Shown here: piece by piece, positions 882 to 42,642 of the stretch
How the letters are laid out: each line of letters opens with the position of its first letter
Position numbering within the stretch: the first letter of the stretch is position 1
Source: Octopus sinensis
Lineage: Eukaryota
Length of the DNA stretch: 43,248 bases
Direction: 5' to 3'
NCBI RefSeq assembly: GCF_006345805.1
Contig: NW_021826242.1
Coordinates: forward strand, 1-43,248
The notes under the pieces: generated by a model
Databases searched by the model: none
The model's input: only the letters and a program-made list of their open reading frames with translations
Told to the model about the DNA's origin: nothing
Program-made: the position numbers and the translations under genes

Positions 882-1454
882 TAATGGGTGGTCCGGAAAG
901 TTCGTGCCGATTTATAGCAGCTTACATTTTGACTTATTTTAGAACATGTTTGAGTCCATAAAATAGGATTTGACTACACCTCCATTTAGAGCACAGTTTA
1001 AGCTATCTTTTCGTGGAAGAAGGTTTATGTTCCTATAACCTGTGTTAATTCTGTAATCCTTTAAATTAGAAGATAACAAAGTTCATTTTCGGCACTTGAT
1101 GCTTTTCTTTTTCCGAAAAGGGAAAAATGCCTCACAAGCAACCAAAGAAATATGCGCAGTTTAAGGTGATGTTCCTTTATCCGAAAGAAATGTACGGAAG
1201 TGGTTCGCAAGGTTCCGAGCTGGAGATTGTAGCCTTATTGATAAAGAGCGGTCAGGCAGACCATCCACCACAGATGATGATCAAGTCATTCATGGAGAAT
1301 AACACACATTACACAACCCGAGAATTGGCAGAAAGCCTCAACCTATCAAAATCTGTCGTTCATGAGCACCTGGTAAAGCTTGGGTAATGGCAAGTATTTA
1401 TTAACCTTCTTCTTTCCTTTAAAAATGGGCACGAACATTCCGGACAACCCAATA
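882..1454 (+). mobile_element. Internally deleted mariner, about 573 bp, copy 1 (DNA-binding-domain ORF decayed)
   Basis: TIRs TAATGGGTGGTCCGGAAAGTTCGTGCCGATTT and AAATGGGCACGAACATTCCGGACAACCCAATA; relic of HFRHLMLFFFRKGKNASQATKEICAV...ERSGRPS...TTRELAESLNLSKSVVHEHLVKLG*; ATG lost, premature stop and frameshift; homologous to 26538-27111. Confidence 0.92.
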
Positions 1455-5674: not shown

Positions 5675-6089
5675 GTGTGCTTAACTACCTTTGAATGATT
5701 AAGAATACCTGTCCAGTGTTCTTAAACAATCCTGCATATTGATGCTTACCAAGCTTATCTCATCCACCGAATTACTTACTAGGCGTTATTAATTGAATAA
5801 ATTTTTTGGTTCCTATTTTTGTTAGTTTTATTTCTATTTTGATTACATTTGCATAATTTACAAATAATACTGATAGTTGCCGAAAATTTTACATGTTCAT
5901 ATTGACACGGTTGTATGATGAGAGATTTACGTCAAGTCTACCATCATTACGAAATCATTTTTAACAGACTGAATTACATTATAAACCGGACAAAGATTTA
6001 CTTCGCTGATTACGAAAGAACAAGACCAAAATATTGTCAATGATGCTTGCCAGAAAAATGAATGCAGTATTCGTCGTTTGACTAATATT

Positions 6090-6487
6090 CTTTTCTACTG
6101 GAAGTACAAGGCCTCGGATTTTGGGAAACGGATTAAGTCGATTACATCAACCCCAGTGTGCAATTGCTACTTATTTAATCGACCCCGAAGGGATGAAAGG
6201 CAAAGCTGACCTCGGCAGAAGTTAAACTCAGAACGTAGCGGCAGACGAAATACCTATTTTTTTACTACCCACAAGGGGCTAAACACAGAGAGGACAAACA
6301 AGGACAGACAAACGGATTAAGTCGATTATATCGACCCTAGTGCTTAACTGGTACTTATTTAATCGACCCCGAAAGGATGAAAAGCAAAGTCGACCTCGGC
6401 GGAATTTGAACTCAGAATGTAGCGGCAGATAAAATACAGCTACACATTTCGATGGCGTTCGAACGATTCTGACAGCTCGCCGCCATT
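6090..6487 (-). mobile_element. SINE A host containing a Tx1-tailed SINE A insert
   Basis: 17-bp TSD GTC(G/A)TTTGACTAATATT at 6073-6089 and 6488-6504; tail at about 6255-6320 followed on the minus strand by GGTATTTCGTCTG. Confidence 0.85.
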
Positions 6488-6521
6488 GTCATTTGACTAA
6501 TATTATTCCCCAACAGAGTGG

Positions 6522-6825: not shown

Positions 6826-7125
6826 TGGGGCGAGCTGGCGGAATCGTTACCGCACCGGAAAAGCAAAGCTTAGTGGGTTCTATGTCATCGACCTACGTCC
6901 TCCGCTGAAATTACTATCCTTGCTCAAATTTGAAACCAATCTAAGGGAAGGCGGCGTGCTGGCAGATTTTCGTCTGTTTTAACTTTTTGAGTTCAAATTC
7001 CGCCTTGGTCGACTTTACCTTTCGTCCTTTCGAGATTAACAAAATAAATACCAGTTGAGCATTGAGACTCCGTAATGGAGTTATGCACTCGCCCGAAATT
7101 ACTAGGCCTATGCAAAAATTTGAAA
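6826..7125 (+). mobile_element. Degenerate SINE A fragments
   Basis: Head at about 6826-6865 and a second head/body at about 6948-7125. Confidence 0.6.
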
Positions 7126-8171
7126 ACAATATTATTTCCCAAGTGTTTATCAAAATTTAGTTTGTATTGCAACGCTTTATACATTAAACATGAACATTAG
7201 CTTACCGACTGAAATAAATTCACTGCAAAACAAGTTGCCAATAAGAAATAAATTATATTCTACTATTTTTCTCTCGTCTTCTTGAATTTCTGATTGCTTC
7301 AGCCTTTGTATCGAACGTCACTTCGATTTTCTTGCTTATCTCCATTTTTATTTTCCCGTTTCTTTCTTGTTTTATGTACGTCAATCATTGTCAATTCTCA
7401 GCTACACAAATACCTCATTCTGCTTCATATATTCCAAGTCTCTTTTACATCCATTTCTACGTCTTTGTTGCCTAGAAACTACAACAAAATATGGAAAAAA
7501 TATATTTCTCATGCGTGTCAGAGCTGACCGAATATGGACCACTCTCTAAAAACACCATATTTTTCTCTTTTCTTTTAATAGTTATTGATTTCAAAATACA
7601 CATACATACACGCATACATACATACACACATACATACATACATCATATATATTTGATTTTGTAAAAAAATGTCAAAATGTTCATATTCCCATATTTTTCT
7701 TCATTTTAGACATTAAAAAAATTTATTTTAATCATTTTTATATATATTTTAGAATAAAACTCGCTCTATTGCTTTTTAATACTTTATTTCATCCTTATCC
7801 GATTATTGATCCTTATAGCGATTTGTGTAGCATGACAGTTCGTTTTTCTTGTTCGTTTTCTTTTGTCTCTCTCTTTCTATATTGTTTATTGTGTATGTAT
7901 TCTTTTACACCAATGGTAATTGAATAACATGACAACCCAAAGCGCAATGTCATCTCAGGAATTTTTAATATAATGGCTAAGATAAATTTTAAAATATTAA
8001 ACGTATTATGACAAAAGTTGAAATATTTTCCTTCCCGTTCAAAACCGTAGTACATCTTATTTAAATTACCATGGAGACGAAACAAAATTTTATTCTAAGT
8101 AGTAAAGAAAGCTATTTGTATTTTATATACACACATCACGAATGCGTATATATATATATACGCATTTAAAT

Positions 8172-8205
<34 letters not shown>

Positions 8206-8337
8206 TATTATGAATATGTACATACGTATTTATGTGTCTGCATACATATCCCAAATACATAATTGATTGTTTTATAGTTCATGTAATTAATCACACTAAA
8301 CATGCACTGAATGAAGAGCACAATACCGATTGTAGTG

Positions 8338-8760
8338 ATAGAGCTGGCAGAATCGTTAGCACGCCGTATTAGCAGTATTTCATCCGTCTTCACGTTCTGA
8401 GTTCAAATTCGGCCGAGGTCGATTTCGCCTTTTATCCTTTCGGGGTCGATGAAATAAGTTCCAGTTGAGTACTGGAGTCGAAGCAAGTGACTATCCCCCT
8501 CTCCCATATTTCGGGCCTTGTACCTATAGTAGAAAGGATTATGATCATAATCAAGACAGCGAGATGGCAGAACGCCGGGCAAAATGTTTAGCGGCTTTTT
8601 GTCCGTCTTTACGTTCTGAGTTGAAATTCAGCTGAGGTCGACTTTACTTTTCAACCTTTCGGGGTCAATGAAATACTGGTTACTCACTGGGGTCGATGTA
8701 ATCGAATAGCCCCCACTCCCAAAATTTCAGGCTCTTTTGCCTATAGTAGAAAAGATTATG
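8338..8760 (+). mobile_element. Two tandem SINE A copies
   Basis: About 8338-8540 and 8555-8760; both end TAGTAGAAA(A/G)GATTATGAT. Confidence 0.85.
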
Positions 8761-9068
8761 ATTATTACTAATGGCGGCCGTTCACTTCGAATTTTCACTT
8801 CTCAAAAGTGTCTTGTATAAGGAAGCTTTCCTTAATTACAGTAGTATATAAGTAGTACCATATTTATAAGAGAGAAAAATATATTAGAGGCAATTTGTTC
8901 GATTGAAACCCTTCAAGATGTACCCTAGCGTGATCCCAGTCCATTCACTGAAACTAGTAATAGATAAAAGATAGGGTAGAAGGCATAGGTAAAAGACAAG
9001 GGGGAAGCTGGTAAGGACAACTTCACTATGTACTTTGTCGGCTTTTCAGTAATGGCTCTTTTGAATTG

Positions 9069-9413
9069 ACCTCAACCGGAATCCATATGGCCCCTGAGAG
9101 TCTGTTTAAGGTTTTTGGGGATCCAAGTACAAAATAATGAATTGGAGATTCACAGTAGTATTTTAAGGGCCCCTGAAAAATTTCGCTTTAGATATACATA
9201 TAATAGTAGTATTGCAAGAAACAGCTAGATTTCTTTCTCTAGCATTTTACATAGTTCAACCTACACAACATAATGTGTCAAAAACAAAATAAGAATTTTG
9301 AAAGACGTTTCTATAAAACTAGTGTTTAAACATCGAAAAGCTATGGGGGTCCGCTAAAATAAATTAGTAATCAAAGGGATCCACAGATAAAAAAAAAATG
9401 TTGAGAACCCCTA
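9069..9413. mobile_element. Probable hAT-type MITE, left TIR eroded
   Basis: Right end GTTGAGAACCCCT; left CTCAACC; internal GG(G/A)TCC subterminal motifs. Confidence 0.5.
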
Positions 9414-9444
9414 ATTTATACAAATAATCAGTGTTATGTTCTCC

Positions 9445-9590
9445 ATATTTGATCTAGTACTTATTTCATCGAAAGAATTAAAGACAAAGTCAACCTCGGC
9501 GGAATTTGAACTCAGAACGTAAAAGTCAAAAGAAATGTTACCAAGCAGATCGTCTGACGGACAATGAATTCTGCTAATTCGCCACCTTCT
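9445..9590 (-). mobile_element. Degenerate SINE A
   Basis: CAAAGTCAACCTCGGCGGAATTTGAACTCAGAACG. Confidence 0.7.
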
Positions 9591-9648
9591 TAATAATTAT
9601 TACTATTTCTAAATCTCATAATGAGAAATATTCAGCGACAGTACTTTA

Positions 9649-10039
9649 GAGTAAAGATTGTTTGCCAACATAGCATGGCAGTCATGGTTTAGGACGAATG
9701 TTGCTGTAATTTAGCCCCAGGAGACATCGTCTCCAACTGGCTATACGACACGATCTGTGTCCTTATATTTTCGAACAAGGGAATCTAGCATCTCCCACTC
9801 ACTCAAAACAATATCTGTGTATCGCGATTTCTGTGCTGATGAAGGGAAATAATCCGGAAATAGCGATACACAGATACTGTTTTGAGCTGAGTGGAGGTGA
9901 TAGATTCCCTTGTTTGAAAATATAAGGACACAAATCGTGTCGTATAGCCAGCTGGAGACGATATCTCCTGGGCCTAAATTACAGCAACATTCATCCTAAA
10001 TCAGGACTCCCATGTTATGTTGGCAAACAATCTTTACTC
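9649..10039. repeat. Long inverted repeat (arms about 183 bp, spacer about 25 bp), probably Penelope-derived
   Basis: 9649-9831 is the reverse complement of 9857-10039 at roughly 90% identity by eye. Confidence 0.95.
9830..9874 (+). ncRNA. Minimal type-I hammerhead ribozyme motif at the hairpin apex
   Basis: UCUGUG-CUGAUGA-A-GGGA(AAUAA)UCCG-GAAA-UAGCGA-UA/CACAGA; stem I 6 bp; the opposite arm preserves the palindromic stem III version AUCGCGAU. Confidence 0.72.
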
Positions 10040-10060
10040 CAACAATAATTCTGTCTGCAA

Positions 10061-10271
10061 GGCGGCGAGCTGGCAGAATCGTTAGCACACCGGGCGAAAT
10101 GCTTAGCAGTATTTTGCCTGTCTTTATGTTCTGAGTTCAAATTCCGCCGAGGTTGACTTTGCCTTTCATCCTTGCCTTCATTCGGAATCGATAAATTAAG
10201 TACCAATTGCGTATTGGGGTCAACTGGCCCCCTCCACGAAAATTTCGGGCCTTGTGCCTAGAGTAGAAAAG
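10061..10271 (+). mobile_element. SINE A, full length with TSD
   Basis: 17-bp TSD AATAATT(C/T)TGTCTGCAA at 10044-10060 and 10272-10288. Confidence 0.9.
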
Positions 10272-10288
10272 AATAATTTTGTCTGCAA

Positions 10289-10470
10289 TAAGTACAAGGC
10301 CTGTGATTGGGGTTAGTCGGACACAACAACAGCAGTGCTCAACTGCTACTTATTTTATCGACCTCGGAGGGATGAAAGCCAAAGTCGATGTCGATGGAAT
10401 TTGAACTTACACTTAATGTGTCGGAAGTAATGCCTCTCGGCATTTTGTCCGACGCACTAACGATTCTGCC
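10289..10470 (-). mobile_element. Degenerate SINE A, tail-to-tail with the previous copy
   Basis: Reverse complement of the family A body. Confidence 0.7.
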
Positions 10471-11351
10471 TACTCGCTGCATTCTTAATAATAATAATAA
10501 TAATAATAACGATTTCTAAGTTTAGTACATGTCCTTGTATATATTCTATTAATTCCAATATAATAAAAGGCAAAGTCTAATTCATTACGTCGTGAATGCA
10601 ATGAAGCGTAACGAAACACAAGGTATTTAGTCCTACACTACACTTTCCTACTTCTACTTTAACAAGAATATCAGTTTTAGCTATTACAATAATAGCTAAG
10701 GTTTTTTGTATTTTTAAAAAAATTAAATATTAATCTCGATTAAGGAAAGGCTCGCGATCTCACCCACCCTTCTTTATCATGAACACCTCTCATCCGTACC
10801 ATATACTTACCCCTCCATCCTGCACCCTTATCTCCGAACTATACCACATATTTGCACCCTGAATCCATTCCAAGTACCCATACCACACATCCACCCCATT
10901 CTCTTCGCGAAATATTAAAAAACACGAAACTCAGTGAAGTAAAATGATGACATAATGGATTCTAAGAATGGATTAACTCATTTTCCTTTCCTGCATGGAA
11001 ATGCATCATGCAGTAAGTTTCATTAGGTGCAGCGAATTTCTGGGTTGCTGATTGGCTCGTTAAATGAAGCGTGGCAATTAATCAACCAAAGATAGCAAGT
11101 ATCGGCAAGGAAGTCGCTCGAAGTGAAACTAGAGCACATCTGTGAAAAATGAGCTGATTCATCAAAAATTTCTAATTGCAAACGCAGCTGAATTTAAAGA
11201 AAGGGTAAAGTAACGGATTAAAATGCCTTACACAATTTAGCTTCGTCATCCGATATTCTGAGTTCGAATTCCACCGGGGTAAGTAATAGTAAACATTTTT
11301 TTTTTTATACAACCAAGGGCAATAAAAATAATTAAGTCATTGATCGTTTAG

Positions 11352-11990
11352 GTAGTGGTGTGGCTGTGTGGTAAGAAGTTTGCTTCCTACTCGCATGGTT
11401 CTGTGTTCAGTCCCACTGCGTGGAACTTCGGCGAGTAGATTTAGTAGATAGAAACTGGCAGAAGCTTGTATCTATCAATTTATCTATCAATCTGTGTCTC
11501 TAAGTTCCCACCATGAAGGCGTGTGGCTTAGTGGTTAGGGGCATTCGGCTCACGATCGTAAGGTCGAGAGTTCAATTCCCAGCGACGCGTTGTGTCCTTG
11601 AGCAAAACACTTTAATTCACATTGCTCCAGTCCACTTAGCTGGCAAAAATGAGTATTACCTGTATTTCAAATTGCCAGCCTTGTCACTGAATCTCCCTGC
11701 GAATTACGTTAAGTGTACACGTGTCTGTGGAGTGCTCATCATATCAGCAGAGACCCTCGTCATCTGAACCGATGGAGTGCTCCTTTTAGAAAATATGTTC
11801 CCACCATCGCTCATCAACCGTTGATGTTTTGTTTGCGCTCCACTAGCGGCTCGGGAAAAGGGAAACAAAATATTCAGTTCTAGGCTTAGCGATAAGTACT
11901 GGGTCAGTCCATTCGACTATAACCCTTCGAGGCGGTACCACATCATGACCGCAGTTTAATGACTAAGACAACTAAACGAAACAAAAAGAC
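11352..11990 (+). mobile_element. Old SINE B interrupted by SINE D
   Basis: 5' half at about 11352-11470, 3' half at about 11800-11990. Confidence 0.7.
11515..11796 (+). mobile_element. tRNA-derived SINE family D (CTTGAGCAAAACACTT body), nested insertion
   Basis: A and B boxes; 11-bp TSD GTTCCCACCAT at 11504-11514 and 11797-11807. Confidence 0.88.
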
Positions 11991-12015
11991 AGCAAATATT
12001 TTCAGCGATTTTTAT

Positions 12016-12277
12016 TTCTACTCTAGGCACAAGGCGTTGTAAATTTTGGATGAAGGGGGCTAGTTGATTACATCGACTCCAGTGCGTAACTGGTACGTAT
12101 TTCAATCGATCCTGAAAGGATGAGAGGCAAAGTCGACCTCGGCGGAATTTGAACTTAGAACGTAGCGGTAGACGAAAGTTCTGATTTCAAATTCCGCTAA
12201 GGTCGACTTTGCCTTTCATCCTTTCGGGGTCGCTATATTAAGTACCAGTTTCGGGGTTTGTGCCTAGTGTAGAAAAG
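12016..12277. mobile_element. Head-to-head pair of 5'-truncated SINE A copies inside one TSD
   Basis: Minus copy 12016-12177, plus copy 12178-12277; about 21-bp TSD AATATTTTCA(G/A)CGATTTT(T)ATT at 11995-12015 and 12278-12298. Confidence 0.85.
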
Positions 12278-12357
12278 AATATTTTCAACGATTTTATTAC
12301 AGTTGAAGGTCATATTGCAGGAATCGTAATTTATATTGCAATATATTTCAAAGAATA

Positions 12358-12569
12358 TACGAAGGCGGAGCCGAAAAGTTCCTGCTTTGGGTTAAAGAAA
12401 ATACAAGAGGATCAGTTATGATTTTATTCAACATATTCCTAAGATTCACACACTTATTGTAGCGGTCCCTCAGTGCTTCTAAGTCCTGTAAAAGAACTCA
12501 GAAGGTTTGGCCTCCAATCAGGCCTTTCGCAATACCCATAAAGCCGGGACTTTTTAGCACCTTCTTGTA
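12358..12569. mobile_element. Mariner-derived MITE, about 212 bp
   Basis: Imperfect TIRs TACGAAGGCGGAGCCGAAAAGTTCCTGCTTT and AAAGCCGGGACTTTTTAGCACCTTCTTGTA; TA flanks; homologous to 42439-42648. Confidence 0.75.
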
Positions 12570-13302
12570 TATCTATCTTAACAATTCCTCTCCAATCTTT
12601 GAATGCAATGAATATGAAACATAGTAAAACATAGAACCATTGAGTGAGTAAAAAGATTAGGGTCTTTCGTCATGAGTTCGACTCCCGGTGGCACGTTGTG
12701 CCTTTACTATTTTTAAACAATTTGTGATAGCTTACAAACAGAATATGTTTTTCCATTTCGGGGAACATAAAATTTTAATCTATTAATTTTAATATAAAAA
12801 TAAAACACAGGACTGCGTATTTTGAAACATAAAATATGCATGCGGCCATGATTGTTCGTTAATGAGGTCTCTCACAGCTTTATTAAAACAAACATGAAAA
12901 ATCTTCAATTCCAAATTGGAATAAGCAGATTCTCCTTGTAGACTCATTTAAATTGATTGCATTAAGTAAACAGTTTTATATGTTCATAATAGAGTAACTA
13001 TTAAGCATTATATGGAATACTGCACAAATGCATAAAAACAAACAAAGTATGAAATATGGTCACCTTAAAGGAATAACATTACTTTATATCCTACCTAACG
13101 TAGAAGATAGATTTTGTATATCTTACATAATTTGTATGTTTTAACTAATTGAAAGACAGCCACAATAACGCTTAGTAAGTAATTCGGTGGACGAGATAAG
13201 CTTGGAAGCATTAATATGCAGGATTATTTAAGAGCACTGGACAGGTATTCTTCATCATTCAAAGGTAGTTAAGCACATATGTATATATATCGAACCATCT
13301 CA

Positions 13303-15903: not shown

Positions 15904-15939
15904 CATAGGTTTCATTTGTATCAAGGTATTTATTGTTAT

Positions 15940-16171
15940 AAGGCAGCGAGCTGGCAAAAACGTTAGCACGCCGGGCGAAATGCTTAGCGGTATTTCGTCT
16001 GCGTTACGTTGTGAGTTCAAATTCCGCCGAGGTCGACTTTTCCTTTCATCCTTTCGGGGTCGATAAATTAAGTACCAGTTACGCACTGGGGTCGATGTAA
16101 TCGACTTAATACCTATGTCTGTCCTTGTTTGTCCCCTCTGTGTTTAGCCCCTTGTGGGTAATAAAGAAATA
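15940..16171 (+). mobile_element. Full-length Tx1-tailed SINE A with TSD
   Basis: TSD AGGTATTTATTGTTAT at 15924-15939 and 16171-16186; tail 16114-16170. Confidence 0.9.
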
Positions 16172-16200
16172 GGTATTTATTGTTATTATTATTATTATTA

Positions 16201-16245
<45 letters not shown>

Positions 16246-18116
16246 TACGGTCAGTCAAAGTAAGCGGCCACTTATTGGAGACATTTGGTATCGCACGCTT
16301 AGTCCGTCAGGGCTGCCCGCTGTCGCCTCTTCTGTACGTATTGGCACTCGAGCCACTACTGTGGAAACTGGAACAGTTAAAGGGTGTCCCTTTCGAACTG
16401 GGACAAGGAAGAGCAGTGTTGGCGTACGCGGACGACGTCACCGTCATGGTGTGAGACGCTTCCGAAGTGGAGACGATCGGTACCATCCTAAAAGAATATG
16501 AGTCGGTTGCAAGGGCTAAAGATCAACTCCAACAAATCGGTAGGTTTGCGCGGTTGGGTTCCTGGAGGGGCAGGACGATGCCATCGGACGATGTCGTTGG
16601 ACGCTGTACCGATGGACCAGTTAAACTGCTCGCGGTCTGGTGTGGTCCCGACATCCAGGTTGATAAGAACTGAGACGAGGAGGCGAACAGAGTGGCCAGT
16701 CTTACCCAGAAATGGACTGAGAAGTAGCTGTCCCTGAAAGGTTGGACAGAGGTTGCGAATGCTTACATCGCCTCCGTTATCAATCATCGCCTGACCGTCG
16801 TACCTTGTCCTGGTTACTGCTTGACCAAGTTAGAACGCCTCTTATTTAAATTCTTGCAGAAATGACATATTCCAGTGGCCAGGCGGTCAGTCTGTTGCCA
16901 GTATCCTCTGAGTGGCAGATTAGGTATGCTGTGGCTCTTAATGCACAGGCACACTCTTAGGTTACCCCACCTGCAACGATTTCTGGACGAAGAGCGTGTG
17001 TGGGCTCCGTTTGTGAGGCCCGTCTTTCCGCGGCTTGTCTCCTTGACGGAGCTGCAGTCCTAGGTGAAGAAAAGACCGAGCCTGGGTGCCTGGTACCTAG
17101 AATATCGTCAGGTGCTCACAGCCTTCTACAAGTCGGACAATTGGATTAGTGGATGTTCTGCTTTAGAAATTTATAGAGGATTAGTGGCGGCGAATTGCGA
17201 CGATGTTCTCGGGGTGACTCTGCGAGCGGACGAGAACAAAATGGCTAGTATGTTCCGGTTGGGAACTATCATAATTTCCAGATGTCTTTGGCTTGCCAGT
17301 GATACGGGAGCGGGGGGTGGTGCTATGTGTTCGAAATAAACTCTACAGGCACGGATGTGCTGTTAGACGGACTCGGCCGAAGTGCCTGAGAGTGACGAAA
17401 CTGTTCTGCACGCCCTCGTTCAGTGTCCGGGTATTGCTGACTTGTGGAGTTATATCGAACGGCTGCTGTCAGTGCGGGACGGATCCATCTGTCGGCTATG
17501 TCTGTAGTGATGATCGCACCGCCGCCCTCCTTCAATTGAGCAGGTAAGGCAGTTTTCCTTTGCCTGGTGGACAATCGAGCAGGCAAGGCAGTTTTCCTTT
17601 TTTGATGGACAAGGCTGAAAGGCATGAGGACAGATACATTCCTCTTTGGTAGAGCTCTCATTGACTTCTTCAAGTTGAAAAGGAAATTGAGAGTGGAAAG
17701 GGAAGTACTGTCTTTGAGTGAGTTTACTGAAAGGTGGGTGAAAGTTGCGGAAATGGCAAGAGTGGATGGTACCTCTCTAAATGTAGACCTGTGAGTCGGA
17801 GAGAAAGAATTAGAGAGAGCACTTGCTCCTGGGGTTCTAGGAAAATCTCGGACAGTGGGGTTCCTCGATTACCCCTAGAGGCACTCCCGTATCAGGAGGG
17901 TCACATCTCTATCTATCATCCCCGCCACTTTATTTTTTTAAAACCTCTGTATGCTATGCATGTGGCCCTTCTTTTTCAGTGAATACCGTGTGTACTTACA
18001 TTATTTTTTTTTATCATTTCATTATATGTAAACCCCAACACTTTATGTCTGTTTTTGTATTGTCCCCCTCATACTTCGCCCTTGTGGCAAATAAATGAAA
18101 TCATCATCATCATCAT
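16246..18116 (+). mobile_element. 5'-truncated degenerate non-LTR retrotransposon, L1/Tx1 clade
   Basis: RQGCPLSPLLYVLALEPL (from 16305), YADD (16425-16436), KINSNKS, LSLKG..EVANAYI, CCHC-like ..KC..SDETVLHALVQCP (about 17377-17430), ORF stop 17792-17794, 3' UTR with AATAAA and a (CAT)n end; multiple stops and frameshifts. Confidence 0.92.
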
Positions 18117-18122
18117 TATTAG

Positions 18123-18262
18123 AAAGGCGGCGAGCTGGCAGAATCGTTAGCACGTCGGGCGAAATGCTTAGCGGTATTTCGGCTGCCGTAACGTTGTGAG
18201 TTCAAATTCCGCCGAGGTCGACTTTGCCTTTCATCCTTTCGGGGTCGATAAATTAACTCCCA
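18123..18262 (+). mobile_element. SINE A, 3' part missing
   Basis: Near-consensus head and body. Confidence 0.85.
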
Positions 18263-18283
18263 TTAATTATTATTATTATTGTT

Positions 18284-19035
18284 TGTATATATAGAAGGCA
18301 AGATGTGTGTGTGTGTGTGTGTGTGTACGTGATTGTAGTTCATGCACAAATTAGCACGCATGTCGCTCAAATTTTAGGAGGACATTCGTCAACATCCTAT
18401 CTGGGTTTTGTCAACTTATTTTTTTCCCGAGACACCCGCGGATAGCGGTAAAATTCTATTTTCAGCGATAGCTTTTAGTAGTAAAACCTATTTTCAGCCA
18501 TAGCTTTTTGACGGTGTCTAACAAAAAAAAAAAAAAAAAAAAACGATAAAGAAAAGTGGAAGAGAGTTTCACAGCCTCTGAACAAAAAAAAAGGGGAAAG
18601 ACAAAGTGAGAGATTGAGAGAGGGAGAGAGTAAGTGACGACGTTCATAATAAATAAAATGTAAAATGTTTTGTTTTTTCTTAAAAAATGTTTTGTTTTTT
18701 CTTAAACACGAGATATAGTGATTCAGGATGTTTTCGAAAGACACTATATTTTATAATCATAGTATATATACTTTCTCACACAACAATTACAATATATTTA
18801 TTTTAAATCATTTATTTATTTTAAATCGTTCATCTTTCTCCCTCCTCTCTCTCTCCTCTCTCTCTCTCTCACACACACATTACTTTGGGTGCGAAAGAGT
18901 TTTGTTTTTATTTTATGCCGAGTAAAAAAAGTATTTTGTTGAGAGTCGATATTACTTAGTTCGGTTCGAAATAAAGAACTTGATTAGCTTAATAATCGTA
19001 ACTTTATCCCGGGCAAGGCCGGGTTATACTGCTAG
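18284..19035 (+). mobile_element. Probable second non-autonomous Helitron family
   Basis: 3' hairpin CCCGGGCAAGGCCGGG, TTATACTG, then CTAG|T (19032-19035); 5' boundary inferred from TATATATAGAAGGCAAGATGTGTG, which resembles the start of the other Helitron. Confidence 0.55.
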
Positions 19036-19949
19036 TTATTATTATTATTATTATTAGGTAACCGATCAGTGCAGCACCAGACAAAATACCTTGCCGATGC
19101 TAGTTACGTGTTTATACATTCCAAATTCAAATTCCACCTTCTTGGCATCGTCTTTCATCTTTCTGAGAACGATCAGACGCGATATGTACGATAGATGGAC
19201 TGCGATCGGCTCGGTCAAAAACACTGCCTTTAAAAACAATTGGACGCCTTATGTCAATATAAGGGACCAAATTCTTTCTTGCCCTTTTCCTCTCTTGCAG
19301 TTTCTTCTTTTTTTCAGTTTGTGCCTCAGTCTTTCATGTACCTGATCCCTGTTTTCCTCCCTCCAGTATTTGATCTGTTTATTTCACTCTTCCTTCTCTC
19401 TCCCTCCCTCTTTCTCTCTTTCTCTTTCTCTCTCTCTCCCTCCCTCTTTCTCTCTTTCTCTTTCTCTCTCTCTGTATTTCCATTACTATTTTTTACTTCC
19501 CTCGTGTATTGCTTCCATTTTCATCATAAATATTGCTTCCGCCACCGCTTCTACAACCATCACTAACACCACAACCAACATCCACATCCCATCGACGACA
19601 ACAACAACAACAACAACAGCAGCAGCAGCAGCAGCAACACAGCTCCTTCTTACACATCTATCATTTCTAAAAACCATGGCGATGCATACAAATTAGAATT
19701 CCACCGACAGAATGAATCCGAGGTTTGATAGATTTGAACGTCTATACGTGTGAGCATGACAGTGTGAGCGTATCTGTGTGTATGCGATTGCATCTGTGTT
19801 GCGCTTGCGTATATATGTATGAATGTACGTGTGTATTTGTATCTGTGTGTGTGTTTGCACGTGTGTTTATGTGCTTGCGGGTGTGTAAGAATGCAAACGT
19901 TTAAACGCTATAAATACAAGTTGTTTATATAAATGTCGTAGTGAAGCAT

Positions 19950-20043
19950 GTATGTATACATACATACACATACATACATACATACATATGTGTGCGTATA
20001 TATATATATATGTGTGTGTGTGTGTATGTATATGTATATGTTA

Positions 20044-20074
<31 letters not shown>

Positions 20075-20228
20075 ATATATATATATAATATATATATGAT
20101 ATATATATATATATGTATAATGTATTATTATATATTATATATATATATATAATATATATTATATATTATATATAATATATATATATATATATATGTATTA
20201 TCTATATGTATAAATATATATATATGTA

Positions 20229-20268
<40 letters not shown>
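19950..20268. repeat. (CATA)/(TG)/(TA) microsatellite block
   Basis: Direct reading. Confidence 0.95.
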
Positions 20269-20271
<3 letters not shown>

Positions 20272-20579
20272 TCATAAAGCATATTGTTATACCTGTGCGT
20301 ATAATATATCTGCACATGAATGATTTATATTTCTGCTTTGTTGCTTCGTTGTTAATAAAAATGTTTTTCATTCTCCGTGTCGTGAAAATCCATAGCACCA
20401 TTCATTCCTCTTCTCATTTATCATTCGGTGCCTTCTGCTCCGAGTTCAAATTCCACCGAGCTTGAGCCTTGACCTTCGTCCAATCGAGGTCGAAAAAAGT
20501 AAAGTACCAGCTGAGCACTGGGTTGATGTAATTTGTCATTTCCCCCCCACCACCGCCATTACTCAGGCTAATCTTGATT

Positions 20580-20700
20580 AAGGAGGGCTATGATCAAGGC
20601 TTTCCTACTGTGACCATCTATTCTGCTGTATTAAATATGGTATCTAAGACGCCAGGGTATGATATGATGAAGTTTGAAGTGCTATTGATAGCATTAGAGG
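20580..20700 (+). repeat. Unclassified interspersed repeat fragment (TTCCT(A/G)CTGTGACCAT...TATCTAAGA...GTATGAT)
   Basis: Related fragments at about 31981-32050, 32445-32570 and 32888-33010. Confidence 0.6.
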
Positions 20701-20714
20701 TTTTAGAAGCTGTT

Positions 20715-21935
20715 GAAATCCTTTCTATTATAGGCACAAGGTCTGAAATTTGGGGGAGGGGGACAGTCGATTACATCGACCCCAGTATTCAACTGGCACT
20801 TGATTTATCGACCCCGAAAGGATGAAAAGTGAAGGTAACATCGGTGGAATTTGAACTCAGAACGTAGCGACGAGCGAATTACCGCTGAGCATTTCGTCCA
20901 GCGTGCCGCCTTCTTTAGAAGCAGTAATGATGATTTCAAATTTTGTCACAAGGGCAGATTGGATGAGGGGATTGAATCGATTACATCGACCCCAGTACGT
21001 AACTGGTACTTATATAATCGACCCCGAAAGGACGAATACCAAAGTCGACCTCGGCGGTAGAAGCAGTAATGATGTAGTGGAATAGCAAAAGGCTGGTGCG
21101 TTCAATTTATTTTGAAGGGTTTGACTTCCCATATGTCTGGAGTTTGTACCAGTCAAACAGTCGGATCAGTTCAAGGGAATATTACTTTCGGAAAATATAT
21201 GGGCTAGTATTTACACCTTTCGTGCTTTCGGGGTCGATAAATTAAGTACCAGTTGTGTACTGGGGTCGATGTAAGCTACTAACATTCTTCCCCAAATTTC
21301 AAGCCTTGTGTCTATAACAGAAAGGATTGTAACTGCTTCTAAAACCTGTAATGCTAACAATAGCATCATTAATTTTAAACTGAGGGAGAGCGGCGACTTC
21401 CTAGAATCGTTAGCACTCAAACAAAATGTTTAACGGTATTTCGTTATATAACGGTCGATAAATTAAGTACCAGTTACGCACTGGGGTCGATATGATCGAC
21501 TTAATCCGTTTGTCTGTCCTTGTTTGTCCTATCTGTGTTTAGCCCCTTGTGGGTAGTAAAGAAATAGGTATTTCGTCTGTCTTTACGTTCTGAAGTAAAA
21601 TTCCACCAAGGTCGACTTTGCCTATCATCCTTTCGGGGTCGATAAATTAAGTACCAGTTGCGTACTGTGGTCGATCTAATCGACTGGCCTCCTCTCCCCA
21701 AATTTCGGGCCTTGTGCCTAGAGTAAAAAAGAATCGTTAGCACCCCGAACAAAATGCTTAGCGGTATTTCGTCCTGCTTTGTGTTCTGAGGTCAGATTTC
21801 TCCGAGATCGACTTTGCCTTCCATCCTTTCGGGGTTGATAAAATAAGTACCAGTCATGTACTGAGGTTCACGTAATCAACCAGCTCTCTATTTCCCTAAT
21901 GAATTTTAGGCCTTGTATCTATAGTACAAAGGTTT
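20715..21935. mobile_element. Cluster of at least five SINE A copies on both strands
   Basis: Minus 20715-20910; minus 20933-21057 (17-bp TSD TAGAAGCAGTAATGATG at 20916-20932 and 21058-21074); plus 21222-21325; plus 21385-21735; plus 21735-21935. Confidence 0.85.
21445..21566 (+). mobile_element. 5'-truncated Tx1-tailed SINE A inserted inside an older SINE A
   Basis: 10-bp TSD GGTATTTCGT at 21435-21444 and 21567-21576; 8 extra nt TATATAAC at the 5' junction. Confidence 0.85.
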
Positions 21936-22167
21936 ATTCTTAAACCGGGGTAATCATGGAACAGGAGATATGCCAACCCAGTTCTCGCAACACTAAACAT
22001 CACTAGCAGCAACAGCGGCAGCAGCAGCAGCGGCGGCGAGAGCAACAGCGGCAAGAGCAGTAGCAGCAGCAGCAGCAGGACTACCATTTCATCGTCTGAT
22101 GGCGAGGGTGAAATGGCAATAACGAAGAAAGAAATTTCCAACATGTCGCTGAAAAACATGAACCATT

Positions 22168-26537: not shown

Positions 26538-27111
26538 TATTGGATTGTCCGGAAAGTTCATGCCGATTTTTAAAGGAAAGAAAAATGTCAATACTTGCCA
26601 TTACCCAAGCTTTACCAGGTGCTCATGAACGACGGATTTTGATAGGTTGAGGCTGTCTGCCAATTCTCGGGTTGTGTAATGTGGGTTATTCTCAGTTAAT
26701 GACTTGATTTGGTTATCATCTGTAGTGGATGGTCTGCCTGATCGCTCTTTATCAATAAGGCTACAATCTCCAGCTCGGAAGTTTGCGAACCACTTCCGTA
26801 TAGTTCTTTCGGATAAAGGAACATCACCGTAAACTGCGCATATTTCTTTGGTTGCTTGTGAGGCATTTTTCTCTTTTCGGAAAAAGAAAAGCATCAAGTG
26901 CCGAAAATGAACTTTGTTATCTTCCATTTTAAAGGGTTACAGAATTAACATAGGTTATAGGAACATAAACCTTCTTCCACGAAAAGATAGCTTAAACTGT
27001 GTTCTAAATGGAGGTATAGTCAAATCCTATTTTATGGACTCAGCCATGTTCTAAAATAAGTCGAAAAGTAAGCTACTATAAATCGGCACGAATTTTCCGG
27101 ACAACCCAATA
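26538..27111 (-). mobile_element. Internally deleted mariner, about 574 bp, copy 2
   Basis: TIRs TATTGGATTGTCCGGAAAGTTCATGCCGATTT and AAATCGGCACGAATTTTCCGGACAACCCAATA. Confidence 0.93.
26601..26927 (-). CDS. Intact 108-aa ORF encoding only the N-terminal bipartite HTH DNA-binding domain of a mariner transposase
   Basis: MEDNKVHFRHLMLFFFRKEKNASQATKEICAVYG...WFANFRAGD...ERSGRPS...TTRELADSLNLSKSVVHEHLVKLG*; no DD34D domain; expression unknown. Confidence 0.7.
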   Translation of the reverse strand: MEDNKVHFRHLMLFFFRKEKNASQATKEICAVYGDVPLSERTIRKWFANFRAGDCSLIDKERSGRPSTTDDNQIKSLTENNPHYTTRELADSLNLSKSVVHEHLVKLG

Positions 27112-29320: not shown

Positions 29321-29361
<41 letters not shown>

Positions 29362-29365
<4 letters not shown>

Positions 29366-29580
29366 CTTTACTACCCACAAGGGGCTAAACACAGAGGGGA
29401 CAAACAAGGACAGACAGAGGGATTAAGTCGATTACATCAACCCCAGTGCGTAACTGGTACTTAATTTATCGACCCCGAAAAGATGAAAGGCAAACTCGAC
29501 CTCGGCAGAATTTGAACTCAGAACGTAACGACAGACGCATTTCGCCCGGCGTGCTAACGTTTCGCGCAGCTCGCCGCCTT
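29362..29580 (-). mobile_element. Tx1-tailed SINE A ending in a (TA)n tract
   Basis: Minus strand ends ...CCCCTTGTGGGTAGTAAAGAAATA then TATATA. Confidence 0.87.
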
Positions 29581-41528: not shown

Positions 41529-42438
41529 TATTGGGTTGGCAACTAATTCCCGCCGTTTTTTTAAATTTTGGAATTCATTGCGTTTTTAAATTTTGGAATC
41601 TATTTTGTTTTTTTTTTCTAGTTAATTTTAGTTAATTTTTGTTCATTTTCAAATCATTAAAATGGAAAGTCAAGTTAAGAAAAACGAGCATTTTAGACAC
41701 CTCCTTCTTTTTGCTTTTAATCAAGGTTCTAAGGCCGCAAAGCTGTTCTCGACATTTGTGCTGTCTATGGAGAGTGTGCCATAGCTGAAAGAACCGCTCG
41801 TGACTGGTATACCAAGTTCAAGAATGGAAATTTTGACCTCAAAGACGCACCTCGTTCTGGCCGTCCAGTTGAGTCCGATGAAGAGCGATTAAACCAACTT
41901 TTGCACGAAAATTCTCGTCAAACGGCAAGGGAACGGGCAGAGAAAATGGAAGCTCCCACACTGCTATAGAGAAGCATCTTCACTCGATGGGAAAGGTTCA
42001 GAAGAATGGAGCATGGGTTCCGCATGCTTAAGTGACAACAACAAAAATCAACCAACCACAAACTCCGCTGGTTTGCTTGCTCGTCACCGCTCAACTCATA
42101 GACACAAGCAACGATTTCTTTACCGAATCGTTACTGGCGACAAAAAATGGTGCCTGTACGTCAATATGAAGCAGCGTAAAAAATGGCTTAGCCCCGGTAA
42201 ACAAGCGACACCGCGCGAGAAACAAGATCTTCATCCACGTTAAACGATGTTATGCGTATGGTGGGACAGGAAAGGGATTATCCATTACGAATTGCTTGAA
42301 CGGAACCAAACGGTCAACGCGGAACTCTGTGTTCAACAGATCGAACTACTCAACACGGCTATTCAACAGAAAAGACCTAATCGGCAGCATAGAGTTCTTC
42401 TGCGGCACGACAACGCCCGCCCTCATATCTCCAATATG
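41529..42438 (+). pseudogene. 3'-truncated mariner element with disrupted transposase
   Basis: Left TIR TATTGGGTTGGCAACTAA; MESQVKKNEHFRHLLLFAFNQG, DAPRSGRP, WVPHA(L), IVTGDKKW, HDNARPH motifs; frameshifts and stops; third catalytic Asp and right TIR absent. Confidence 0.92.
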
Positions 42439-42642
42439 TTGAAAAAGTTCCTGGCTTTGGATAAAAGAAAATACAGGGGGATCAGTTAATTAAGATTTTA
42501 TACAACACATTCCCTTCTCCGATTTACACACTTATTATAGCAGTCCTTCAGTTTTTCTAAGCCCTGAAAAAGAACTCGGAAATTTGGGTCTCCAACCAGA
42601 CCTTTCACGACACCTTTAAGGCAAGTAACTTTTCTGTATTCC

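What the first reader, a model, noticed from the sequence alone, without database searches (positions are those of the whole stretch)
15924..21576. Tailed SINE variant appears to target GGTATTT, including a fixed site in its own parent SINE family
Four copies end ...CCCCTTGTGGGTA(A/G)TAAA(G/A)AAATA. Three are followed immediately by GGTATTT. At 21445-21566 a truncated copy sits inside an older SINE A between GGTATTTCGT duplications. At about 6255 the same internal position is used. At 15940-16171 the target is non-SINE DNA with a 15-16 bp TSD beginning GGTATTT, which argues against a fixed dimer. The fourth copy (29362) abuts (TA)n. Tx1-clade LINEs are known to be sequence-specific (for example Tx1L in Tx1D, Keno in U2, Mutsu in 5S). 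Inference: a SINE that uses a site-specific Tx1 endonuclease and lands in SINE safe harbours. The sample is only four copies.
Basis: partly seen in the sequence, partly recalled or inferred. Interest (0 to 1): 0.82.

Follow-up and report, generated by a model that had tools for sequence, protein, structure and literature searches.

The report
Octopod SINE that prefers GGTATTT sites
A short retrotransposon in this octopus-like genome is joined by its 3' end to the same 7-base sequence GGTATTT in three of four copies. This probably reflects the target preference of the L1/Tx1-like LINE that moves it, so it is a modest new example of a known behaviour, and the sample is tiny.

Summary
The sequence facts hold. 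Four copies carry the tail CCCCTTGTGGGTARTAAARAAATA, and three are followed at once by GGTATTT (chance about 1e-11). One copy (15940-16171) has a perfect 15-bp target duplication, GGTATTTATTGTTAT, in non-SINE DNA, so GGTATTT comes from the target.

Two readings need correction. The copy at 6255 is a dimer: tailed SINE plus a SINE A unit starting at position 49. It is flanked by its own 17-bp duplication, so it moved as one unit. The copy at 21445 is probably also a 5'-truncated dimer, inserted with a 41-nt duplication into another SINE. It is probably not an in-place insertion with a 10-bp duplication. Composite elements therefore exist. Their second units differ by a block, so the junction formed at least twice.

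A candidate partner LINE fragment lies at 16254-18102. It has RT and a zinc-binding domain, is closest to human L1 ORF2p, and has a homologous tail with a conserved hairpin. In an Argonauta hians locus, a full-length relative and its SINEs show duplications starting TAT(T) at 9 of 11 junctions. A target preference is therefore a property of this LINE lineage.

Tx1 clade membership, the role of the endonuclease and the "safe harbour" idea were not tested. About half of the window's GGTATTT sites lie in SINEs anyway. I class this as a new member of a known kind.

The parts
15940..16171 (+). Full-length tailed SINE (tSINE, 232 nt) ending ...CCCCTTGTGGGTAATAAAGAAATA
   Evidence: It served as the reference copy for the self-BLAST.
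15925..15939 (+). 5' copy of the 15-bp target-site duplication GGTATTTATTGTTAT. The 3' copy is at 16172-16186, at the left edge of an (ATT)n microsatellite.
   Evidence: The repeat is perfect, 15/15, in non-SINE DNA.
21445..21566 (+). 8 nt of filler (TATATAAC, 21445-21452) plus a 5'-truncated tSINE (element positions 118-231, 21453-21566)
21567..21734 (+). SINE A-type unit from position 49 (GGTATTTCGT...) to its tail ...GCCTAGAGTAAAAAAGAAT. It is either the rest of a host SINE (reading A) or the second unit of a truncated dimer (reading B).
21384..21444 (+). SINE head, positions 1-58, ending GGTATTTCGT. Its last 40 nt (21405-21444) match 21732-21772 at 36/41.
21732..21931 (+). SINE A-b unit that starts at position 18 (AATCGTTAGCAC...), directly after the preceding tail. 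Under reading B it is the remainder of the SINE that was split by the dimer insertion.
6255..6486 (-). Full-length tSINE, the first unit of a dimer
6090..6254 (-). Second unit of the dimer: a SINE A-type sequence from position 49 (GGTATTTCGT) to the tail ...CCAGTAGAAAAG. It is a hybrid subfamily carrying TTAATCCGTTT.
6073..6089 (-). 3' copy of the 17-bp duplication AATATTAGTCAAAYGAC that flanks the whole dimer. The 5' copy is at 6488-6504.
   Evidence: The match is 16/17.
29361..29580 (-). tSINE copy inserted in a (TA)n/(CA)n microsatellite. It has a 13-nt internal deletion that removes its own GGTATTT site.
16254..18102 (+). 5'-truncated, decayed L1/Tx1-like LINE (the C-terminal part of RT plus a zinc-binding domain and the 3' UTR). 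It ends ...GCCCTTGTGGCAAATAAATGAAATC. It is preceded by (ATT)n and followed by (ATC)n/(ATT)n.
20932..21057 (-). 5'-truncated SINE with a LINE-like tail ...CCCTTGTGACAAAATTTGAAATC, flanked by a perfect 16-bp duplication ATCATTACTGCTTCTA (21058-21073 and 20916-20931)
18122..18265 (+). SINE A copy with an unoccupied GGTATTTCGG site at 18173. It shows what the empty state of position 49 looks like.
10060..10274 (+). Full-length SINE A-a with the duplication AATAATTYTGTCTGCA (10044-10059 and 10272-10287). It shows that SINE A uses a different target start (AAT).

Best explanation
The tailed element is an octopod SINE. Its last ~60 nt, including a small conserved hairpin (a 4-bp stem with a CUUGU loop), are shared with an L1/Tx1-type LINE lineage that encodes an APE endonuclease, RT and a zinc-binding domain.

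The SINE is copied into the genome by target-primed reverse transcription. The acceptor is preferentially a site whose duplicated part begins GGTATTT. This is a longer version of the TAT(T) start seen for the related LINE and SINEs in Argonauta. I attribute the choice mainly to where the LINE endonuclease nicks the bottom strand (5'-AAATACC^); this step is inferred, not shown.

The abundant SINE A family carries GGTATTTCGT as its conserved positions 49-58, and this is the only TATT in its consensus. SINE units are therefore frequent acceptors simply because they supply many of the sites.

A tSINE nested there has no T4 terminator before the end of the host unit. Pol III can therefore read through, and the resulting dimer RNA (tSINE plus SINE A 49-end) is re-mobilised through the SINE A tail. 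That would produce the composite at 6073-6504 and probably the truncated one at 21445-21734.

Shown:
- the junctions and the duplications;
- the tail homology and the hairpin covariation;
- the LINE domain content;
- the Argonauta motif.

Inferred:
- the endonuclease as the determinant;
- read-through transcription;
- which LINE is the partner.
For: - Three of four tails abut GGTATTT, where none is expected by chance.
- A perfect 15-bp duplication beginning GGTATTT lies in unique DNA.
- The second units of the two dimers differ by a block (TTAATCCGTTT against GGCCTCCTCTC) and are only 81% identical. The junction with position 49 therefore arose at least twice.
- The tail is homologous to LINE 3' ends from the window, a metagenome contig and Argonauta.
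- The hairpin is 84% paired against 68% in shuffles, with a covariation score of 0.43 against 0.165; 0 of 500 shuffles reached the observed value.
- The Argonauta LINE has ORF1 (a weak CCHC hit), Exo_endo_phos, RVT_1 and zf-RVT. Its RT matches human L1 ORF2p at E = 3e-51.
- In Argonauta, 11 junctions follow ...GAAATC: 9 start TAT and 7 start TATT (p about 1e-13). Five duplications contain the motif in both copies; a sixth has TATTTG in its 5' copy and CATTTG in its 3' copy. There are two tandem SINE-TSD-SINE-TSD arrays.
- SINE A copies in the same window use different starts (AAT or GATT), so the motif is not a general property of the locus.
- There is no T4 run between the tSINE end and the end of the dimer.
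- Literature: Tx1 LINEs are often target-specific and can pass that preference to SINEs (PMC4494074). L1-Tx1 families are recently active in Octopus vulgaris (PMC13282606).
Against: - There are only three GGTATTT junctions, and only one has an unambiguous duplication made in place.
- The fourth copy sits in (TA)n, so any specificity is not absolute.
- The one LINE copy in the window, and a SINE with the same GAAATC end, are followed by ATCAT..., not GGTATTT. Their tails also differ from the tSINE tail. No LINE with the matching tail or target was found.
- Several SINE subfamilies that share the hairpin have different junction motifs in one genome, and these partly merge with their own 3' ends (AAT, GATT). 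That pattern fits RNA-primer pairing at least as well as several distinct endonuclease specificities.
- In Argonauta the duplication starts exactly at TAT. Here it starts two bases earlier, at GG.
- No endonuclease was tested.
Confidence: 0.5

Rival explanations
1. Homing guided by the RNA, not by the endonuclease. SINE (pol III) and LINE (AAUAAA in the tail) transcripts run into the downstream flank, so the RNA from a copy sitting at GGTATTT ends ...GAAAUAGGUAUUU.... The endonuclease nicks loosely in AT-rich DNA. Priming succeeds where the nicked bottom strand (...AAATACC-3') pairs with that carried-over flank, so each generation recreates the same junction.
For: - Subfamily-specific junction motifs occur within one genome although all share the same tail hairpin.
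- For SINE A-a and A-b, the motif (AAT, GATT) is present once at the junction and also in the 5' copy of the duplication. This is what pairing of an RNA end with the primer produces.
- There is no T4 terminator near the tSINE ends.
- The LINE tails contain AATAAA.
- The SINE A tail joined to AGAAT|CG of another SINE at 21732 shows 5 nt of such overlap.
Against: - Seven nucleotides of required pairing is long for TPRT microhomology.
- The homology between the unique site and the SINE site stops exactly after GGTATTT.
- The Argonauta elements end in C, followed by TAT(T), with no overlap between element end and target.
- In known Tx1, R1 and TRAS elements the endonuclease is the main determinant (established knowledge, cited in PMC4494074).
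Confidence: 0.2
2. The two SINE-internal junctions are RNA-level chimeras. The reverse transcriptase copies a SINE A RNA (or a fragment whose 5' end is at position 49) and jumps to the 3' end of a tSINE RNA, as in U6-L1 chimeric retrocopies. The product integrates once, with one duplication. The GGTATTT at the unique site is then a coincidence.
For: - The 6255 composite has the exact anatomy of such chimeras: a complete upstream unit ending at its true 3' end, a 5'-truncated downstream unit and a single flanking duplication.
- The 21445 case can be read the same way.
- Hybrid SINE subfamilies and other chimeric joins are seen in the window and in Argonauta.
Against: - It needs two independent jumps at the same nucleotide of SINE A.
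- It also needs an unrelated 7/7 match at the unique-DNA insertion (about 1e-4 by chance).
- No reason is known for an RNA end at position 49.
- There is no complementarity between the cDNA end and the tSINE RNA 3' end.
Confidence: 0.1
3. There is no 7-base specificity. The machinery has only the short TAT(T)/AT-rich preference seen in Argonauta. Position 49 is hit because it is the only TATT in a very abundant SINE, and the GG at the single unique site is luck.
For: - The Argonauta duplications start at TAT(T), preceded by varied bases.
- The fourth tSINE copy is in (TA)n.
- The SINE A consensus has a single TATT (read from the alignment).
- The sample is tiny.
Against: - TATTT occurs 314 times in the window, and only 6 of those are GGTATTTCG. 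Two of three hits at the SINE site would therefore be unlikely under a plain TATTT rule.
- In both cases where two copies can be compared, the duplicated segment starts at GG, not at TAT.
- The GG at the unique site has a prior of about 0.035.
Confidence: 0.15

Closest known systems
SINEU (especially SINEU-3) mobilised by Tx1-Mar LINEs in crocodilians (Kojima 2015, PMC4494074)
   Same: A SINE inherits the target preference of an L1/Tx1-type LINE. The preferred target lies inside another abundant transposon. Tandem copies sandwich a duplicated target, as seen here for Argonauta SINEs and for window SINE A-b.
   Different: - SINEU has snRNA-derived heads and targets one position of a Mariner DNA transposon, with a 16-bp duplication, in most copies.
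- Here the motif is about 7 bp, also occurs in unique DNA, and sits in a sister SINE.
- The LINE partner with the same target has not been found, and n = 3.
Site-specific Tx1-clade LINEs: Tx1L in Tx1D, Keno in U2 snRNA genes, Kibi and Koshi in (TC)n and (TTC)n (Kojima and Fujiwara 2004; Christensen et al. 2000; as summarised in PMC4494074)
   Same: APE-type endonuclease LINEs of the L1/Tx1 group with sequence-directed integration. The LINE copies seen here abut ATT/ATC microsatellites or TATT sites.
   Different: Those families use long, defined targets. Here only a short motif is seen, and clade membership was not tested.
Human L1 and Alu with the endonuclease consensus TTTT/AA
   Same: A SINE borrows a LINE's TPRT machinery. 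A short nick-site consensus shapes the first bases of the duplication. The RT of this lineage is closest to L1 ORF2p.
   Different: There is no poly(A) tail. Recognition is apparently through a specific 3' tail hairpin. The motif is longer and is not complementary to the RNA end.
UnaL2/UnaSINE1 'stringent' LINE-SINE pairs (Kajikawa and Okada 2002)
   Same: A shared 3' tail with a conserved stem-loop close to the 3' end. Covariation is seen here.
   Different: The LINE clade is different. Function of the hairpin was not tested here.
U6-L1 and other template-switch chimeric retrocopies; dimeric and composite SINEs
   Same: The composite at 6073-6504 is a complete upstream unit fused to a 5'-truncated downstream unit inside a single duplication.
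   Different: The fusion point is the same nucleotide in two different composites. It also equals the target of a solitary insertion. This points to DNA-level nesting followed by read-through rather than random jumps.
Octopus tRNA-derived CORE-SINEs (OR1/OR2, Ohshima and Okada 1994; 'tRNA-Core' in PMC8967140)
   Same: From memory, the central part (...TTTCATCCTTTCGGGGTCGATAAATTAAGTACCAG) resembles the CORE domain. SINEs of this class dominate octopus genomes.
   Different: This was not compared with the published consensus sequences. Rfam and ARAGORN find no tRNA in the head.

Membership tests
SINE mobilised by a LINE through a shared 3' tail | The 3' end is homologous to the 3' end of an autonomous LINE | tested here: met
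   Alignment of the tSINE tails with three LINE 3' ends (window, L001, Argonauta) and with Argonauta SINEs. The shared hairpin shows covariation.
SINE mobilised by a LINE through a shared 3' tail | Short, non-coding, multicopy, flanked by target-site duplications | tested here: met
   The element is 232 nt. There are 4 tailed copies and 22 SINE hits in 43 kb. The duplications are 15 and 17 bp.
SINE mobilised by a LINE through a shared 3' tail | Head derived from a pol III-transcribed RNA gene, with an internal promoter | tested here: inconclusive
   A- and B-box-like motifs can be read in the sequence (TGGCAGAATCG; GAGTTCAAATTCC), but ARAGORN and Rfam find no tRNA.
Tx1 clade of non-LTR retrotransposons | ORF2 with an APE endonuclease, RT and a C-terminal CCHC/zinc-binding domain | tested here: met
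   The Argonauta relative has Exo_endo_phos, RVT_1 and zf-RVT. The window fragment has RVT_1, and its homologues have zf-RVT. This architecture is shared with the L1 clade, so it does not discriminate between them.
Tx1 clade of non-LTR retrotransposons | Phylogenetic placement of the RT within Tx1 rather than L1 | not tested
   No Tx1 reference sequences were available. The closest solved structure is human L1 ORF2p. The literature lists L1-Tx1 as the L1-like LINEs of octopus, which is a lead only.
Target-specific LINE/SINE (Kojima's criterion: one kind of sequence in more than 20% of flanks) | The same sequence recurs at the 3' junction or duplication of independent copies | tested here: met
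   tSINE: GGTATTT at 3 of 4 junctions. Argonauta: TAT at 9 of 11 and TATT at 7 of 11. The samples are very small, and the recurring sequence is a short motif, not a repeat family.
Target-specific LINE/SINE (Kojima's criterion: one kind of sequence in more than 20% of flanks) | The autonomous partner LINE shows the same target as the SINE | tested here: not met
   The only LINE copy in the window is followed by ATCATC...ATTATT, and the L001 copy by (ATT)n. Their tails end GAAATC, not GAAATA, so they may not be the true partner. In Argonauta the LINE and its SINEs do share TATT.
Target-specific LINE/SINE (Kojima's criterion: one kind of sequence in more than 20% of flanks) | The endonuclease cleaves the target sequence specifically | not testable with these tools
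   This needs biochemistry.
Template-switch chimeric retrocopy (U6-L1 type) | A complete upstream RNA copy fused to a 5'-truncated downstream copy, with one duplication around both | tested here: met
   The 6073-6504 composite. The same anatomy is also produced by read-through transcription of a nested copy, so this feature does not decide the mechanism.

The most novel reading that the evidence does not exclude
A SINE subfamily homes with about 7-bp specificity to a conserved site between the promoter boxes of its sister SINE family. It then uses the host SINE's tail to spread as read-through dimers, a form of SINE-on-SINE parasitism. The site may be chosen by pairing of a carried-over flank in the RNA with the nicked target, that is, RNA-templated homing rather than endonuclease recognition.
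Probability: 0.2. Interest if true: 0.65.

Novelty: new member of a known kind. Interest (0 to 1): 0.4.

Why it matters
SINEs make up a large share of octopus genomes (11.6% in O. vulgaris), yet how they choose insertion sites has hardly been studied.

If the GGTATTT preference holds genome-wide, three things follow:
- It would give a second clear case, after the crocodilian SINEU/Tx1-Mar pair, of a SINE inheriting target choice from an L1/Tx1-type LINE.
- It would explain nested and dimeric SINE families in octopods.
- It would offer a compact system (a 7-bp motif, a 60-nt tail and a small hairpin) for separating the roles of endonuclease nicking and RNA-primer pairing in target-primed reverse transcription.

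If it does not hold, this is an ordinary short nick-site preference.

Tried and rejected
**Attempts to get more copies from the same species all failed:**
- Exact-pattern scans for the tail found nothing in metagenome contigs, bacterial and archaeal genomes or viral contigs.
- Scans for the SINE core found nothing in viral contigs or genomes.
- A looser tail pattern in metagenomes gave only chance hits, L004-L006.
- A protein search with the antisense ORF of the SINE found nothing.
- A search with the window's mariner transposase fragments found no cephalopod proteins.
- A window ORF is not on record.
- The contigs for P0004, P0005 and P0006 were missing or ended before the LINE tail.
- A full-text search for the SINE core sequence found no paper.

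**Readings I rejected:**
- GGTATTT is the element's own 3' end. It is present in the 5' copy of the duplication at 15925, and it is absent after the (TA)n copy.
- The two SINE-internal cases are one segmental duplication. Their flanks are unrelated and their second units differ by a block.
- The primer pairs with GGUA inside the tail. The product would then lack the last ~12-14 nt of the tail, and it does not.
- The inverted SINE pair at 12062-12290 is a footprint of nicking at the site. It is simply two 5'-truncated copies lying head to head.
- The inverted duplication at 20680-20832 and 21213-21365 supplies an empty site. The homology ends 19 nt before the SINE.

Full report
**What is in the sequence**

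The window is AT-rich (38% GC), full of microsatellites and dense in SINEs. A 232-nt query finds 22 SINE hits in 43 kb. The tail CCCCTTGTGGGTARTAAARAAATA occurs exactly four times: at 6255-6278(-), 16148-16171(+), 21543-21566(+) and 29361-29384(-). None is expected by chance.

Three tails are followed at once by GGTATTT. The fourth is followed by (TA)n. GGTATTT occurs 14 times in the window on both strands, against 9 expected from composition. The chance that it follows at least 3 of 4 junctions is about 1e-11. The core observation is therefore real.

**The clean case**

The full-length copy at 15940-16171 is flanked by a perfect 15-bp direct repeat, GGTATTTATTGTTAT, at 15925-15939 and 16172-16186. 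The repeat lies in DNA that is not SINE, at the left edge of an (ATT)n tract. The 5' copy contains GGTATTT, so the 7-mer comes from the target and is not the end of the element. The (TA)n copy, which ends ...GAAATA|TATATA, also shows that the element ends at GAAATA.

**The copy at 6255 is a dimer that moved as a unit**

Read on the minus strand, the layout is a full-length tailed SINE (6486 to 6255) followed by a SINE A-type unit from position 49 (GGTATTTCGT...) to its own tail (6254 to 6090). The whole composite is flanked by AATATTAGTCAAATGAC (6488-6504) and AATATTAGTCAAACGAC (6073-6089), a 16/17 match. It therefore retrotransposed as one RNA using the SINE A tail. Its duplication starts AAT, as for other SINE A copies.

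**The copy at 21445 is ambiguous and probably also a dimer**

- *Reading B.* The inserted piece is filler plus the tSINE fragment plus the following SINE unit (21445-21734). It landed in another SINE and made a 41-nt duplication.
- *For B.* The head upstream (21405-21444) and the SINE that starts exactly where the 'host' tail ends (21732-21772) match at 36/41. They share the unusual variant AACAAAATG, and the upstream piece is closer to that copy than to any other SINE in the window.
- *Also for B.* It explains why a 5'-truncated SINE abuts the tail with an AGAAT overlap. It explains why the duplication starts AAT. It leaves a plausible outer duplication for the split SINE, ATTAATTTTAAAC (21368-21380) against TTTATTCTTAAAC (21933-21945), a 10/13 match.
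- *Against B.* Its duplication is 41 nt, whereas eight others in this system are 12-17 bp.

I consider B at least as likely as A. Under B, the 'GGTATTTCGT duplication' is only the overlap between the long duplication and the start of the dimer's second unit.

**Independence of the junctions**

The second units of the two composites are 81% identical and differ by a block: CGACTTAATCCGTTTCCC against CGACTGGCCTCCTCTCCCC. They are therefore not copies of one master dimer, and the join between the tSINE 3' end and SINE position 49 formed at least twice. With the unique-DNA insertion, that makes three events.

**The LINE**

A 5'-truncated, decayed LINE lies right next to the first copy, at 16254-18102. 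Its translation carries RT motifs (RVT_1) and a C-terminal zinc-binding region. It ends ...GCCCTTGTGGCAAATAAATGAAATC, which is homologous to the SINE tail. It is the only fragment of this LINE in the window.

The best named relative is a protein of Argonauta hians (49% identity). This, together with the SINE homology below, places the window in an octopod.

The Argonauta locus L003 holds a full-length element of about 5.8 kb (6886-12650):
- ORF1 has only a weak zinc-knuckle hit, below Pfam's cut-off.
- ORF2 has Exo_endo_phos, RVT_1 and zf-RVT.
- A 17-bp duplication TATTTTTAAAATTTGTA flanks it.
- Its RT is closest to human L1 ORF2p among solved structures (E = 3e-51), and its endonuclease to the L1 endonuclease.

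The lineage is therefore L1/Tx1-type. I could not test Tx1 against L1. The literature lists L1-Tx1 as the L1-like LINEs of octopus, with 13 recently active families in O. vulgaris.

**A shared tail hairpin**

The LINE 3' ends, the tailed SINE, SINE A, other window SINEs and the Argonauta SINEs all share a 4-bp stem around a CUUGU loop, about 10 nt from the 3' end. Across 19 tails, 84% of cells pair, against 68% in shuffles and 24-47% when the partners are slid. Three of the four pairs show double changes. The covariation score is 0.43 against 0.165, and 0 of 500 shuffles reach it. This fits recognition of a specific tail by the LINE reverse transcriptase, and it suggests that all these SINEs depend on one LINE lineage.

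**Target preference is a property of the lineage**

In the 22-kb Argonauta locus, 11 junctions follow ...GAAATC. Nine start TAT and seven start TATT (p about 1e-13). Where both copies can be read, the motif is in the duplication:
- TATTTTTAAAATTTGTA
- TATTATCTTTSTGCC
- (C)TATTTCAAGGAA
- TATTTATTTYCATTAC
- YATTTGTCAAAC
- TATAGRYCAGCAC

Two tandem SINE-TSD-SINE-TSD arrays occur there, and one occurs in the window for SINE A-b (GATTATGAT...). Kojima described the same hallmark for SINEU-3 and Tx1-Mar.

Within the window, other subfamilies have other starts:
- SINE A-a starts AAT (AATAATTYTGTCTGCA, AATATTAGTCAAAYGAC, AATCGTTAGC).
- SINE A-b starts GATT.
- The GAAATC-ended SINE at 20932-21057 starts ATCATT, within a perfect 16-bp duplication.
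- The LINE is followed by ATCATC.

**Interpretation**

The simplest account has four steps:
1. The tailed SINE integrates by target-primed reverse transcription at sites beginning GGTATTT, an extended form of the lineage's TAT(T) preference.
2. SINE units carry that 7-mer at their conserved position 49, which is also the only TATT in the SINE A consensus. Six of the 14 GGTATTT sites in the window are such positions, so SINEs are hit often. No 'safe harbour' selection is needed.
3. Nested copies have no T4 terminator before the host's end.
4. They are therefore transcribed as dimers and re-mobilised through the SINE A tail.

A plain TATTT rule fits poorly. TATTT occurs 314 times in the window and only 6 of those are GGTATTTCG. 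The duplicated segment also begins at GG.

**What remains open**

The determinant of the site is not known. The endonuclease is the classical answer for Tx1, R1 and TRAS elements. However, the subfamily-specific motifs, which partly merge with each subfamily's own 3' end, also fit pairing between the nicked target and the RNA 3' end. That RNA end could include a flank carried over by read-through.

An RNA-level template jump could make the dimers, but it does not explain the unique-DNA site.

The matching autonomous LINE was not found. The nearby LINE has a different terminal sequence and a different flank. All of this rests on three junctions.

**Comparison and verdict**

The closest precedent is SINEU with Tx1-Mar in crocodilians: a SINE that borrows an L1/Tx1 LINE's target preference and lands in another transposon (PMC4494074).

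The present case would differ in three ways. The motif is short and also occurs in unique DNA. The carrier of the motif is a sister SINE. Nested copies are re-mobilised as dimers.

I class it as a new member of a known kind and of moderate interest.

Noticed in passing
window tails, e.g. 16140-16171, 18070-18102, 10242-10274; L003 12620-12650: A conserved 4-bp hairpin with a CUUGU loop, about 10 nt from the 3' end, is shared by LINE, tSINE, SINE A and Argonauta SINE tails. Compensatory changes support it (84% paired; covariation score 0.43 against 0.165 in shuffles).
   Followed up: yes
window 16187-16253 and 18103-18121, 18266-18285; L001 2020-2105: The LINE copies in the window and in metagenome contig L001 are embedded in, or followed by, ATT/ATC microsatellites. 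The tSINE at 15940 sits at the edge of the same (ATT)n tract. This could be a microsatellite target or a tail made by the element.
   Followed up: partly
window 8341-8530 and 8569-8753: Two SINE A-b copies lie in tandem and sandwich a repeated target, GATTATGATYAT (8537 and 8754). The same SINE-TSD-SINE-TSD layout occurs in Argonauta (L003 14820-15310 and about 1477-2090).
   Followed up: partly
window 29361-29580 (-): This tSINE copy has a 13-nt internal deletion (CTTAGCGGTATTT) that removes exactly its own GGTATTT site, and it has four extra G at its 5' end.
   Followed up: no
window 6090-6254 (-): The second unit of the dimer is a hybrid. Its body carries the tSINE-type TTAATCCGTTT segment but has a SINE A-type tail. 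This suggests recombination or template switching between SINE RNAs.
   Followed up: partly
window 20680-20832 (-) and 21213-21365 (+): An inverted duplication of about 150 bp covers the 3' part of a SINE A-b copy and its flank (GATT..AAC.GCTTCTAAAACCT.TAATGCTA.CAATAGCA).
   Followed up: partly
window 12062-12290: Two 5'-truncated SINE A copies are joined head to head, one antisense from its tail to about position 68 and one sense from position 53 to its end. The sense copy starts inside the GGTA|TTTCGT site.
   Followed up: partly
window 1100-1384 (+), 26604-26936 (-), 41733-42486 (+): There are decayed mariner/Mos1-type transposase fragments (HTH_48 and DDE parts). The best database relatives are only 62-66% identical, and none is from a cephalopod.
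   Followed up: partly
window 3441 (-), 25092 (+), 32285 (-); L003 4034 (+): Another repeat, with the motif GACCAAAGCCTTGTGAGTGGATTTGGTAGACGGAA, is shared between the window and Argonauta. It is probably a further SINE family and has not been characterised.
   Followed up: no
LINE and SINE tails (e.g. window 18085-18090; L003 12633-12638): The LINE tails contain a canonical AATAAA about 6 nt before the element end (AGTAAA or AATAAA in the tSINE). LINE transcripts should therefore extend into the flank before polyadenylation, yet the copies carry no poly(A).
   Followed up: no
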